Assembly: GCA_002269645.1 (NCBI GenBank)
Contig: NIVC01000110.1
Coordinates: 620,001-684,000 of the forward strand
Length of the DNA: 64,000 nucleotides
Direction of reading: 5' to 3'
Source of the DNA: Macrostomum lignano
Lineage: Eukaryota
Shown here: piece by piece, positions 14,603 through 63,658 of the stretch
How positions within the stretch are numbered: position 1 is the stretch's first letter
How the letters are laid out: every line of letters begins with the position of its first letter
The notes under the pieces: model-generated
Seen by the model: the letters and a program-made list of their open reading frames with translations, nothing else
Databases searched by the model: none
What the model was told of the DNA's origin: nothing
Made by a program: the position numbers and the translations under genes

Positions 14603-14711
14603 CTAAAGCTCTCCCTGAGACCGCGGGCTGCTCATAAGGCTGTTGAGACCCGCGCGAGCTTCTTCCAGGTTAGCACGAGTCTGCCGCAGCATGTCCAAGT
14701 CGGCCGATGCA
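14603..14711 (-). CDS. Terminal coding exon ([35 protein letters not shown])
   Basis: Acceptor ggtttgtag|T; phase 2 matches the previous exon; coiled-coil-like peptide. Confidence 0.7.
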
Positions 14712-62700: not shown

Positions 62701-63658
62701 AGAGGAAGGGGGAGAAGGAGAGGAAGGGGGAGAAGGAGAGGAAGGGGCAGAGGGAGAGGAAGGGGGAGAAGGAGAGGAAGGGGGAGAAGGAGAGGAAGGG
62801 GCAGAGGGAGAGGAAGGGGCAGAGGGAGAGGAAGGGGGAGAAGGAGAGGAAGGGGGAGAAGGAGAGGAAGGGGGAGAAGGAGAGGAAGGGGCAGAGGGAG
62901 AGGAAGGGGGAGAAGGAGAGGAAGGGGGAGAAGGAGAGGAAGGGGGAGAAGGAGAGGAAGGGGGAGAAGGAGAGGAAGGGGGAGAAGGAGAGGAAGGGGG
63001 AGAAGGAGAGGAAGGGGGAGAAGGAGAGGAAGGGGGAGAAGGAGAGGAAGGGGCAGAGGGAGAGGCAGCGGGGGGAGAGGCATAGTGAGAGGGAGGAGAG
63101 GGAGAGGAGATAGGAAGATATTGATACAGCAGCTAAAACTGGCAATGCCAAGAATACATGGGATAGTGAGATCTGCTGTGTGGGAGGGATGGCACAGTAG
63201 GGTAGAAACACTCGAGGAAGAGTCCAAGATTATGGAAAAGAAAGGCTATTAGAAGAGTTGCAAAGCGAAGAGAGCAGTCACCCCCAACTTTTCATTGTTT
63301 CGAAATCTTGAAGAAATTACTAACGCTCACACACACACACACACACACACACATCATAACATATTGTTGTTTTCAGCTGCATGAAATGTCAGTTGAGTTT
63401 TACGCTTGACCAAACTGTCTTCAAAAGACAGAAGTTGCTGTGCTGCAACAGATAAAACAATGCATTTCTCAGCCAGAGATGCGTGGGTGGCTGTTTCGTT
63501 CTAATATCTTAATAAACCGTTGACCTCACTCCAAGTATGGCAGTCCCAGCTGGTTCAAGCTGGTGCACCGCATGCGAACTCACATCTCGGTTAGCCAGCT
63601 CCTCATGAAGTCGCTGGATCTCCATTCTGAGTGTGCTGATGAGCTTTGCTGTGGGGTC
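14603..63658 (-). CDS. Giant kinesin-3 family (KIF16B/STARD9-like) gene, multi-exon; motor domain predicted upstream of the window
   Basis: Phase-consistent GT-AG exon chain: neck coil, split FHA, coiled coils, giant repeat exon, terminal exons ending in TAG at 14603-14605; about 10,900 aa in-window. Confidence 0.8.
14806..14897 (-). CDS. Penultimate exon ([30 protein letters not shown])
   Basis: tggtgcag| acceptor, AG|gtgaga donor, phase 0 to 2. Confidence 0.65.
14978..15592. repeat. 44-45-bp C-rich intronic minisatellite
   Basis: ACCCCATCACCCCATACCCTGTGATTTTCTACCCCAACTGCACCC units. Confidence 0.9.
15974..16027 (-). CDS. 54-nt exon ([18 protein letters not shown])
   Basis: ctcgtaag| acceptor, GGT|gtaagt donor, phase 0 to 0. 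Confidence 0.55.
16598..46071 (-). CDS. Giant exon (or two exons) of the kinesin-3 gene: 1243-aa ORF, 188-aa ORF and 8251-aa ORF
   Basis: tttacag|GCG acceptor at 46071, in frame with ORF 42202-45933; CAG|gtgggc donor at 16598. Interruptions: three in-frame stops at 42058-42204 and a 1-nt frameshift in the T7 run at 41529-41535. Confidence 0.75.
18329..41413 (-). repeat. Coding tandem array, about 24.6 copies of a 939-bp (313-aa) unit
   Basis: ORF-track features recur exactly every 939 bp (18420 to 40956); all translated copies are identical; exact identity ends at 18329 and 41413. Confidence 0.97.
41414..41860 (-). repeat. Diverged, AT-rich partial copy of the 313-aa unit
   Basis: [70 protein letters not shown] aligns to the array unit. 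Confidence 0.85.
48872..48939 (-). CDS. Candidate small exon ([22 protein letters not shown])
   Basis: ctgcctcag| acceptor, TCA|gtaagt donor; phase 1 to 0 bridges the 49771 exon and the 46071 acceptor; an alternative acceptor exists. Confidence 0.4.
49771..49841 (-). CDS. Small exon ([23 protein letters not shown])
   Basis: ttacacag| acceptor, G|gtgagt donor, phase 2 to 1. Confidence 0.65.
50295..51244. repeat. (TTCTG)n pentamer satellite with variants
   Basis: Directly visible; ends next to the exon donor at 51271. Confidence 0.95.
51271..52246 (-). CDS. Exon, acidic/low-complexity with coiled-coil ([14 protein letters not shown])
   Basis: The ORF 51267-52094 frame is open back to about 52310; GG|gtgagt donor at 51271; 5' boundary uncertain. 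Confidence 0.7.
52297..53337 (-). CDS. Coiled-coil-rich exon (379-aa ORF)
   Basis: gattgcag|CT acceptor, phase 1, matches the upstream donor; [34 protein letters not shown] heptads; 3' boundary uncertain. Confidence 0.8.
53655..53821 (-). CDS. Coiled-coil exon ([29 protein letters not shown])
   Basis: gctcag|G acceptor, A|gtaagg donor, phase 2 to 1. Confidence 0.75.
53898..53951 (-). CDS. 54-nt exon ([17 protein letters not shown])
   Basis: gtttacag| acceptor, AG|gtgagt donor, phase 2 to 2. Confidence 0.7.
54259..54285 (-). CDS. 27-nt microexon (LSTSSLDIG)
   Basis: ctccaacag| acceptor, GG|gtgagt donor, phase 2 to 2. Confidence 0.6.
54352..54586. repeat. (TCTG)n microsatellite
   Basis: Directly visible. 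Confidence 0.95.
54938..55029 (-). CDS. Exon after the FHA domain ([30 protein letters not shown])
   Basis: cctccgcag| acceptor, AG|gtagga donor, phase 0 to 2. Confidence 0.7.
55068..55285. repeat. 23-bp minisatellite (GGGGTTTCAGGACCCGGGTGTGA)
   Basis: About 9 variant units. Confidence 0.9.
55352..55420 (-). other. tRNA-Glu-like/SINE-head remnant
   Basis: CTCTCGCGCCACGACCCCTGGTTCGATTCG resembles the tRNA-Glu(CTC) anticodon/T-arm; no full cloverleaf. Confidence 0.35.
55447..55649 (-). CDS. FHA domain exon 2 ([42 protein letters not shown])
   Basis: Matches the kinesin-3 FHA pattern HC..VNG..L..G..I.LG..FRFNHP; ccgtgcag|GG acceptor in phase 1, CAG|gtgaat donor. Confidence 0.88.
55700..57140. 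repeat. 20-bp intronic minisatellite (CCAGGTGTCTCTCTACTCTC)
   Basis: About 70 variant units inside the FHA intron. Confidence 0.95.
57193..57346 (-). CDS. FHA domain exon 1 ([51 protein letters not shown])
   Basis: Aligns with the KIF16B-type GVVLD..PHL..STGII.YHL..T.VG..DI segment; ccggcag| acceptor, A|gtgagt donor. Confidence 0.85.
57448..58513. repeat. Perfect 15-bp array (GGGATTTCGGGACCT), about 71 copies
   Basis: Directly visible; no variants seen. Confidence 0.97.
58805..59235. repeat. 20-bp minisatellite (CTACTGACACCCCACTGTAT)
   Basis: Directly visible. Confidence 0.95.
59578..59752. repeat. 36-bp minisatellite, about 4.5 copies
   Basis: AGGCACAGAGAGAGTACATGCATCAGTGTACATGTA. Confidence 0.9.
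59810..60066. repeat. 51-bp minisatellite, 5 copies
   Basis: CCCTGAGATTGAGATCTCACAGATCACAGATCAAAAGTTACACACTCACCC. Confidence 0.92.
60662..60872. repeat. 25-bp minisatellite, about 8.5 copies, containing TGAGTCA and CCAAT
   Basis: GTCATTCAGTGAGTCACTCCAATCG units. Confidence 0.92.
61025..61078 (-). CDS. 54-nt exon ([18 protein letters not shown])
   Basis: ttatttcag| acceptor, GAG|gtgagc donor, phase 0 to 0; aligns with the KIF16B TQNILKEQ segment. Confidence 0.75.
61290..63112. repeat. About 1.8-kb purine-rich compound satellite (18-bp GGGGGAGAAGGAGAGGAA / GGGGGAGACGGAGGGGAA units)
   Basis: The plus strand is almost free of pyrimidines. Confidence 0.95.
63324..63354. repeat. (CA)n microsatellite
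   Basis: Directly visible. Confidence 0.9.
63404..63442 (-). CDS. Candidate 39-nt exon ([13 protein letters not shown])
   Basis: ctgttgcag| acceptor, weak gtaaaa donor, phase 0 to 0; supplies a Trp where KIF16B has LTKEWTNK. Confidence 0.35.
63584..63658 (-). CDS. Kinesin-3 neck-coil exon ([25 protein letters not shown])
   Basis: Matches the kinesin-3 (NE)DPNAKLIRELREEI.RL neck motif; cattccag| acceptor, GAT|gtgagt donor; alternative in-frame donor at 63530. Confidence 0.85.

What the first reader, a model, noticed from the sequence alone, without database searches (positions are those of the whole stretch)
14603..63658. A titin-scale kinesin-3: neck and FHA joined to about 7,700 aa of identical 313-aa helical repeats
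Seen: the scattered minus-strand ORFs are not separate genes. Small exons with GT-AG ends link in consistent phase from a neck coil (63584-63658) through a two-exon FHA (57193-57346, 55447-55649) and coiled coils into the repeat ORF, ending at TAG 14603. Established: neck coil, coiled coil then FHA is the kinesin-3 layout, and the FHA-proximal sequence resembles KIF16B/STARD9; human STARD9 is about 4,700 aa with one very large exon. Inference: a protein of about 11,000 aa (over 1 MDa) with a motor at one end and a 24.6-module rod. It might act as a motor-anchored spacer, tether or molecular ruler along microtubules. I know of no kinesin with this architecture.
Basis: partly seen in the sequence, partly recalled or inferred. 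Interest (0 to 1): 0.92.

Follow-up and report, generated by a model that had tools for sequence, protein, structure and literature searches.

The report
Giant flatworm kinesin with repeat array
This Macrostomum lignano (flatworm) locus appears to encode one enormous STARD9-type kinesin motor protein (about 11,300 aa) that includes 24.6 identical 313-aa helical modules, which would be the largest kinesin I know of. The copy in this window carries six frame-breaking lesions that may be assembly errors.

Summary
The window is Macrostomum lignano DNA.

Two RNA-seq-guided public gene models sit on older contigs that both break inside the array, and they support the two ends. BOX15_Mlig029284g1 covers kinesin motor, FHA and the start of the giant exon. 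BOX15_Mlig008056g1 covers repeats, tail and three 3' exons. The motor lies beyond base 64000.

The motor-FHA part groups with STARD9 rather than PX-bearing KIF16B and has the STARD9-type loop-12 insertion. No START or PX domain is present.

The repeat is truly coding. Only one of six frames is open, and a 915-bp homologous repeat from a metagenome is conserved at codon positions 1 and 2 but not 3.

The claim of "consistent phase" is not literally true. The window has five 1-bp deletions and one degraded stretch relative to the colinear contig, and read literally the ORF stops at codon 666. Repairing them gives a single ORF of 10,943 codons, or 11,335 aa and 1.22 MDa with the motor.

Copy number, transcript continuity and function are unverified.

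The parts
63584..63658 (-). Neck-coil exon ([25 protein letters not shown]); first exon inside the window. The motor exons lie beyond base 64000.
   Evidence: ag/GTGAGT flanks; matches P0006 residues 393-418.
61025..61078 (-). Small exon, CC1 part 1.
   Evidence: GT-AG junctions reproduce the P0006 peptide exactly.
60064..60108 (-). Small exon, CC1 part 2.
57193..57346 (-). FHA exon 1.
55447..55649 (-). FHA exon 2.
   Evidence: Pfam FHA E 6.8e-8 on the joined exons; junction confirmed.
54938..55029 (-). Small exon after the FHA.
54259..54285 (-). 27-nt exon; absent from UniProt models P0001 and P0002, so possibly a cassette exon.
53898..53951 (-). 54-nt exon; also absent from P0001 and P0002.
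53655..53821 (-). Exon with coiled-coil-like sequence.
51271..53337 (-). 2,067-nt exon (coiled-coil-like, then low-complexity). It has a 1-bp deletion in a G-run at about 52275 relative to L001, which breaks the frame.
   Evidence: Window versus L001: 16 synonymous and 5 non-synonymous differences, dN/dS about 0.10.
49771..49841 (-). 71-nt exon; its donor at 49771 joins the giant exon.
   Evidence: P0006 residues 1374-1398.
16598..46071 (-). Giant exon of 29,474 nt: unique region, diverged copy 0, array and tail. Frame breaks in the window at 46041, 46000, 42203-42088, 42041 and 41536.
   Evidence: The acceptor at 46071 is used by P0006. Indel list. Continuous ORF in restored L001 and in the repaired window. 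Donor CAG|GTGGGC at 16598 matches P0007.
42088..42203 (-). Degraded stretch: 89 nt shorter than L001 and many substitutions. L001 reads through in frame here and encodes part of copy 0.
41414..42285 (-). Copy 0: a full-length diverged repeat unit (31% identity to the unit, E 2e-28, read on L001) immediately upstream of the array.
18329..41413 (-). Array of 24.58 copies of a 939-bp (313-aa) unit with zero mismatches. Acidic (net charge -23 per unit) and predicted helical.
16598..18328 (-). Unique C-terminal tail within the giant exon; no Pfam domain.
   Evidence: 94.6% identical to the P0007 tail.
15974..16027 (-). 3' exon ([18 protein letters not shown]).
   Evidence: Same exon and splice sites as P0007 on L002.
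14806..14897 (-). 3' exon ([30 protein letters not shown]).
14603..14711 (-). Last coding exon, ending in TAG at 14605-14603; an ATTAAA lies at 14572.

Best explanation
The window holds most of a single Macrostomum lignano gene for a STARD9-clade kinesin-3.

Layout: an N-terminal motor (just outside the window) is followed by neck coil, CC1, FHA and a coiled-coil-like region. Then comes one 29.5-kb exon. That exon encodes about 1,270 aa of unique, mostly helical sequence, one old diverged repeat copy, 24.6 identical 313-aa acidic helical modules and a 580-aa tail. Three small 3' exons follow. The conceptual product is 11,335 aa (1.22 MDa, pI 4.8).

The array is a real coding tandem repeat kept uniform by concerted evolution or very recent expansion.

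I read the five missing single bases and the degraded stretch in the window as most likely long-read assembly errors. A recently damaged homeologue is the alternative.

Inferred mechanism:
- The motor dimerises through the neck coil and CC1 and walks to microtubule plus ends, as kinesin-3 motors do.
- The unique C-terminal tail, which has no START or PX domain, binds a cargo or structure.
- The acidic helical array acts as a very long spacer between the two, and its length can change by unequal exchange.

Shown: gene structure, family placement, and coding constraint on the unit. Inferred: translation as one chain, array length, and the spacer role.
For: Species and gene models:
- The species is identified.
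- P0006 (BOX15_Mlig029284g1; Kinesin, Microtub_bd, FHA) maps to the window's exons with exact GT-AG junctions and runs 750 aa into the giant exon.
- The Mlig_3_7 models are RNA-seq-guided (PMC5730564).

Continuity of the reading frame:
- L001 ends 2.2 copies into the array. With its two 1-bp deletions restored it is open for 2,271 codons, from the acceptor into the array.
- Copy 0 bridges the unique sequence and the array.
- P0007 (BOX15_Mlig008056g1) joins repeats, tail and the same three 3' exons. Its contig starts inside an array.
- The repaired window CDS is one ORF of 10,943 codons ending at TAG 14603.

Nature of the frame breaks:
- Every frame break is a deletion in whichever assembly is broken.
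- L002's otherwise identical copies carry scattered 1-bp gaps.
- dN/dS between the window and L001 is about 0.10.

Coding constraint on the unit:
- One open frame of six.
- The homologous 915-bp repeat L003/P0008 is 43-47% identical in protein over a full period. Nucleotide identity by codon position is 0.61, 0.68 and 0.33.

Family placement:
- P0006 falls in the STARD9 clade in 200 of 200 NJ bootstraps.
- It has the STARD9-type loop-12 insertion.
Against: - The window read literally is not one ORF: there are six frame disruptions, and the first stop falls at codon 666.
- No transcript or protein spanning motor to array was seen. Public annotation lists two separate 'hypothetical proteins', and no expression data were found.
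- Zero variation over 23 kb means the copy number cannot be verified from sequence. It contrasts with about one indel per 2-4 kb in the flanking coding DNA, so consensus homogenisation is possible.
- The rod or spacer role rests only on composition and a single-sequence AlphaFold model (pLDDT 73, pTM 0.38), with no fold match.
Confidence: 0.62

Rival explanations
1. The window copy is a recently inactivated homeologue or allele. The lesions are real, so this locus yields at most a truncated protein of motor, FHA and coiled coil (about 1,050 aa). The array here is an untranslated relic, and an intact copy may exist elsewhere in the partly duplicated genome.
For: - Six frame disruptions in the window, including a heavily altered stretch at 42203-42088.
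- The genome of the sequenced DV1 line (the Mlig_3_7 assembly; the window's own strain and assembly are unknown) carries extensive duplicated blocks that are at least 95% identical (PMC5730564).
- At least two array types exist, with 939-bp and 924-bp units.
Against: - All the lesions are deletions and there are no nonsense substitutions.
- The 25-kb array-plus-tail ORF is untouched.
- dN/dS against L001 is about 0.10.
- The same kind of 1-bp gap is scattered through L002's array copies and through L001, which is typical of consensus error.
Confidence: 0.22
2. The repeat ORF is expressed as its own gene or mRNA, through an internal promoter or spliced-leader trans-splicing inside the giant exon, and is separate from the kinesin.
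For: - Public annotation has the repeat, tail and 3' exons as a separate model (P0007).
- 38.8% of M. lignano genes are reported as trans-spliced (PMC5730564).
- No spanning transcript was seen.
Against: - The separation coincides with contig ends inside the array.
- P0007 starts at an internal Met within a repeat.
- There is no stop codon or intergenic DNA between the kinesin part and the array in L001.
- Copy 0 lies in the same exon as sequence included in the kinesin model.
Confidence: 0.1
3. The array's size and perfect identity are assembly products. The real array is shorter, longer or heterogeneous, so 'titin-scale' overstates the protein.
For: - Zero mismatches in 23,085 bp, although the adjacent coding DNA shows indel errors.
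- The older assembly could not cross the array.
- An array with no internal variation can be sized only by reads that span it.
Against: - The older Mlig_3_7 assembly shows 2.2 and 7.2 near-identical copies at its contig ends, so the array is long.
- A 15-bp indel is fixed across each array type.
- The metagenomic relative also shows identical neighbouring copies, with a 117-nt exact terminal overlap.
Confidence: 0.3
4. The array is a non-coding satellite that is open by chance.
For: The genome is very rich in tandem repeats.
Against: - Only one of six frames is open, p about 1e-4.
- The period is divisible by 3 and is in frame with the coding flanks on both sides.
- Cross-species conservation falls at codon positions 1 and 2 only.
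- A diverged copy 0 retains the frame.
Confidence: 0.02

Closest known systems
STARD9 (vertebrate giant kinesin-3; 4,700 aa, about 517 kDa)
   Same: - N-terminal kinesin-3 motor, then FHA.
- A very long, poorly conserved central region encoded mostly by one huge exon.
- P0006 groups with STARD9-like sequences in 200 of 200 bootstraps.
- It shares the extended loop 12 that PMC4310736 describes as STARD9-specific: 56 aa between anchors, against 36-40 aa in KIF16B and Klp98A.
   Different: - No C-terminal START domain (Pfam negative on the tail and 3' exons).
- The DSGxxS degron is not evident in the loop-12 insert.
- The centre contains 24.6 identical 313-aa modules.
- It is about 2.4 times longer.
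KIF16B / Drosophila Klp98A (PX-domain kinesin-3)
   Same: Motor, neck coil, FHA and coiled-coil layout; 42-55% identity over motor to FHA.
   Different: - No PX domain.
- Separated from the PX-bearing clade in the tree.
- Has the loop-12 insertion that this clade lacks.
Giant modular spacer proteins such as titin and nebulin (own knowledge)
   Same: Megadalton size built from tandem modules, so a length-setting role is conceivable.
   Different: - No Ig or Fn3 domains and no nebulin repeats.
- The modules are identical rather than diverged.
- The protein is attached to a motor domain.
- No structural or functional test was done.

Membership tests
Kinesin-3 | Kinesin motor domain with P-loop, switch I and switch II | tested here: met
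   Not in the window, since it lies beyond base 64000. It was tested on the colinear contig's model P0006. Pfam Kinesin scores E 2.1e-100. The motifs GMTGTGKS, SSRSHS and DLAGSE are visible. The best PDB matches are KIF13B, KIF1A and KIF14.
Kinesin-3 | Neck coil directly after the motor, followed by an FHA domain | tested here: met
   Neck exon 63658-63584; FHA exons 57346-57193 and 55649-55447; Pfam FHA E 6.8e-8 and 6.7e-9.
Kinesin-3 | Positively charged K-loop in loop 12 | tested here: inconclusive
   Loop 12 of P0006 ends in RRTRRRH, which is arginine-rich rather than lysine-rich. No functional test was done.
STARD9 subfamily | The motor-FHA region clusters with STARD9 rather than KIF16B | tested here: met
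   NJ tree of 31 sequences over 568 columns. The split separating vertebrate STARD9 plus P0006 from PX-bearing KIF16B and Klp98A appears in 200 of 200 bootstraps. It is a distance method only, with no outgroup.
STARD9 subfamily | Insertion in loop 12 of the motor | tested here: met
   There are 56 aa between the SLVTLA and IPYRDSVLTW anchors. STARD9-like sequences have 58-69 aa and KIF16B/Klp98A have 36-40 aa. The feature is described in PMC4310736.
STARD9 subfamily | C-terminal START lipid-binding domain | tested here: not met
   No Pfam family at E <= 0.01 on the 685-aa tail plus 3' exons, and none on the other exons.
KIF16B/Klp98A | C-terminal PX domain | tested here: not met
   No PX hit, and the tree places the gene outside the PX-bearing clade.
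Protein-coding tandem repeat (as opposed to a satellite) | Open frame, period divisible by 3, and purifying selection on the encoded peptide | tested here: met
   939 = 3 x 313. One open frame of six, with 2 of 20,000 shuffles open. Nucleotide identity to the L003 unit by codon position is 0.61, 0.68 and 0.33.
Single mRNA and single polypeptide from motor to array | A transcript or peptide evidence spanning the kinesin exons and the array | not testable with these tools
   Only indirect evidence is available: ORF continuity in L001 and in the repaired window, and two RNA-seq-guided partial models.

The most novel reading that the evidence does not exclude
M. lignano makes a 1.2-MDa kinesin, the largest motor protein of its family by more than twofold. 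Its central part is a tandem array of identical 313-aa acidic helical modules kept uniform by concerted evolution and conserved as a module in at least one other species. Copy number would then set the length of a motor-anchored spacer or tether and could vary between individuals or homeologues.
Probability: 0.35. Interest if true: 0.8.

Novelty: new variant of a known kind. Interest (0 to 1): 0.6.

Why it matters
If translated as one chain, this would be a kinesin more than twice the size of STARD9. A motor domain would be coupled to about 7,700 aa of identical modules.

That would give a natural system for asking what very long tails do for a transport motor, for example spacing, tethering or scaffolding. 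It would also show how a coding array is kept homogeneous while its protein sequence stays under selection.

It also shows that the public M. lignano annotation splits this gene into two 'hypothetical proteins' because the earlier contigs broke inside the array.

Tried and rejected
- **Rfam on the whole window:** no match.
- **Foldseek of the repeat-unit model against the PDB:** nothing below E 0.7.
- **AlphaFold of the unique helical region (44034-42253):** pLDDT 42, unusable, so it was not searched.
- **Two metagenome-contig scans** for more relatives of the unit: none.
- **Exhaustive HMMER search:** only P0007 and P0008.
- **Literature and supplements:** searches for Mlig029284 and Mlig008056, and for a giant or largest kinesin, found nothing.
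- **Internal sub-repeats:** the motif L[ST]xEE...L..AL occurs about 8 times per unit, but self-alignment scores (up to 51) do not exceed shuffles (up to 54), so this is not claimed.
- **GT-AG 'introns' that would patch each frame break:** these can be found. I rejected them because L001 reads straight through these sites in frame, with homology to the repeat unit.
- **Pfam DUF5053 on the unit:** a short 32-aa match, treated as compositional.
- **Cluster members P0003-P0005:** unrelated short peptides, ignored.
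Full report
**Source and observation**

The window is eukaryotic, with spliced genes and abundant micro- and minisatellites. Protein searches identify it as Macrostomum lignano, a free-living flatworm.

On the minus strand a stop-free frame runs 41578-16583, which is 8,332 codons. Inside it a 939-bp unit (313 aa) is repeated from 41413 to 18329. 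That is 24.58 copies, with not one mismatch at lag 939.

The unit has one open frame of six. Only 2 of 20,000 shuffles are open, and its codon-position composition looks coding (G 50% at position 1, GC3 73%).

**Gene structure**

The public model P0006 is NCBI BOX15_Mlig029284g1, 2,177 aa. It has Pfam Kinesin (E 2e-100), Microtub_bd and FHA. It lies on contig NIVC01000560.1 (locus L001), which is colinear with the window.

Its residues 393-2168 map to minus-strand exons of the window. I refined every junction to canonical GT-AG sites that reproduce the P0006 peptide. The exons are:
- 63658-63584 (neck coil)
- 61078-61025
- 60108-60064
- 57346-57193 and 55649-55447 (FHA; Pfam E 6.8e-8)
- 55029-54938
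- 54285-54259
- 53951-53898
- 53821-53655
- 53337-51271
- 49841-49771
- an acceptor at 46071

Motor residues 1-392 lie upstream of base 64000. The window's last 300 bases are an intronic 31-bp satellite.

At the 3' end, an exhaustive HMMER search with the unit found only two proteins.

The first, P0007, is PAA77137.1 (BOX15_Mlig008056g1, 1,320 aa). It has about 2.3 repeats, the same tail and three small exons. The window carries those exons with matching splice sites at 16027-15974, 14897-14806 and 14711-14603, after a donor CAG|GT at 16598.

P0007's contig (L002) starts inside an array and L001 ends inside one. The older assembly therefore broke in the array, and that is why the public annotation has two fragments. 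The annotation itself is RNA-seq-guided, built with StringTie, TACO, TBONE and TransDecoder (PMC5730564).

**Frame continuity**

Compared with L001, the window:
- lacks one base at about 52275 (G5 to G4), at 46041, at 46000, at 42041 and at 41536 (A8 to A7);
- has a stretch at 42203-42088 that is 89 nt shorter and heavily substituted.

Spliced literally, the ORF stops at codon 666.

L001 in turn lacks one base at two other sites (window positions 43761 and 43726), which is where P0006 ends. Every break is a deletion in whichever assembly has the broken frame.

With its two bases restored, L001 is open for 2,271 codons, from the 46071-equivalent acceptor into the array and on to the contig end. 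L001's reading across the window's degraded stretch is homologous to the repeat unit. The roughly 300 aa just before the array are a diverged 'copy 0', 31% identical at E 2e-28.

Repairing the window at the six sites gives 32,832 nt, which is one ORF of 10,943 codons ending at TAG 14603. With the 392 motor residues the product is 11,335 aa, 1.22 MDa and pI 4.8.

Hypothetical GT-AG introns could patch each break. They would delete sequence that L001 shows to be coding, so I reject them.

**Are the breaks real?**

Evidence that they are assembly errors:
- They are deletions only, mostly in short runs.
- The array copies in L002 are identical except for scattered 1-bp gaps.
- Window and L001 differ in exon 53337-51271 by 16 synonymous and 5 non-synonymous changes, dN/dS about 0.10. 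Neither copy has therefore drifted as a pseudogene for long.

Evidence that they are real:
- There are six lesions in about 12 kb.
- The genome is partly duplicated.

I put assembly error at about 0.6.

**Is the repeat real and coding?**

The second hit, P0008, is a 343-aa ORF filling a 1,032-bp metagenome contig (L003). The contig is binned as a Kangiellaceae MAG; I infer that this is mis-binned animal DNA. It has a 915-bp period with an exact 117-nt terminal overlap and a single open frame.

It aligns with the unit over a whole period at 43-47% identity, E 8e-73. Nucleotide identity is 0.61, 0.68 and 0.33 at codon positions 1, 2 and 3. That pattern indicates purifying selection on the protein.

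Within M. lignano, all L002 copies carry a 15-bp in-frame deletion (AEKAA). That deletion is absent from all 24 window copies and both L001 copies, and there are otherwise no substitutions. Each array is therefore homogenised as a block.

Copy number cannot be verified from sequence alone.

**Family placement**

The best solved-structure matches are KIF13B, KIF1A and KIF14. Named homologues are KIF16B, STARD9 and Klp98A at 42-55% identity.

In an NJ tree P0006 sits with lophotrochozoan and vertebrate STARD9-like sequences. It is separated from PX-bearing KIF16B and Klp98A in 200 of 200 bootstraps.

It also has the long loop 12 typical of STARD9 (PMC4310736).

Human STARD9 has 4,700 aa with an N-terminal kinesin domain, an FHA domain and a C-terminal START domain (PMC10203878). 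Here no START, PX or any other Pfam domain is found after the FHA.

**The unit**

The unit is rich in A, L, E, D and K, with net charge -23. Single-sequence AlphaFold gives about 12 helices at pLDDT 73 but pTM only 0.38. There is no fold match in the PDB. 'Helical' is supported; 'rod' is not tested.

**Mechanism (inferred)**

I propose a plus-end-directed kinesin-3 motor joined through a very long acidic helical spacer to a unique tail that binds an unknown partner. Array length could change by unequal exchange.

The rivals are a damaged homeologue, separate expression of the repeat ORF, and an inflated or homogenised array. I give them lower weight, and the report states what would refute each.

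**Verdict**

The one-gene, STARD9-like, roughly 11,000-aa reading is well supported indirectly. Function and true length remain open.

I found no literature on it. I rate it a new variant of a known kind, with interest 0.6.

Noticed in passing
window 2905-7664 (+): An LTR retrotransposon with a gag zinc-knuckle ORF (3538-4068), a protease-RT-RNase H ORF (4083-6248) and an integrase ORF (5738-7165). It has 100% identical flanking repeats (3083-3265 and 7304-7486) and 35-bp tandem arrays at both ends, which suggests a young insertion downstream of the kinesin gene.
   Followed up: partly
window 50295-51244, 55741-57140, 57444-58514, 58812-59233, 59811-60067, 61318-63108, 63696-64000: The introns of the kinesin gene are largely filled with long mini- and microsatellite arrays, for example a 10-mer x95, a 15-mer x71 at 99% identity and an 18-mer x100. 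Their lengths differ between the window and contig L001.
   Followed up: no
window 54259-54285 and 53898-53951: Two small exons (27 + 54 nt, together in frame) are present in NCBI model P0006 but skipped in UniProt models P0001 and P0002. They may be cassette exons or a difference between predictors.
   Followed up: no
window 51271-53337 versus 42215-46071: Divergence from contig L001 is uneven. There are 21 substitutions in the 2.07-kb exon (about 1%) but only 2 in 3.85 kb of the giant exon's unique part (about 0.05%). Possible causes are gene conversion between homeologues or a mosaic assembly.
   Followed up: partly
window 18420-41543 (+): Each repeat unit also carries a 203-aa ORF on the opposite strand (24 copies in the ORF list). 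These are antisense by-products of the GC-rich unit and do not stay open across a whole unit.
   Followed up: partly
window 9357-9860 and 11754-12257: A segment of about 504 bp duplicated at about 96% identity, 2.4 kb apart, in the region downstream of the gene. It also matches L002 several times. Its nature is unknown.
   Followed up: no
L003 (JGI 3300040801, Ga0450804_0071181; NCBI MEE4247509.1): A 1,032-bp contig deposited as part of a Kangiellaceae bacterial MAG encodes one full period of the flatworm repeat unit. It is probably animal DNA mis-binned into a bacterial genome.
   Followed up: partly
L002 1-6670: A second array type in the same species has a 924-bp unit, with a 15-bp in-frame deletion fixed in every copy. 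This implies at least two loci or haplotypes, each with its own homogenised array.
   Followed up: partly
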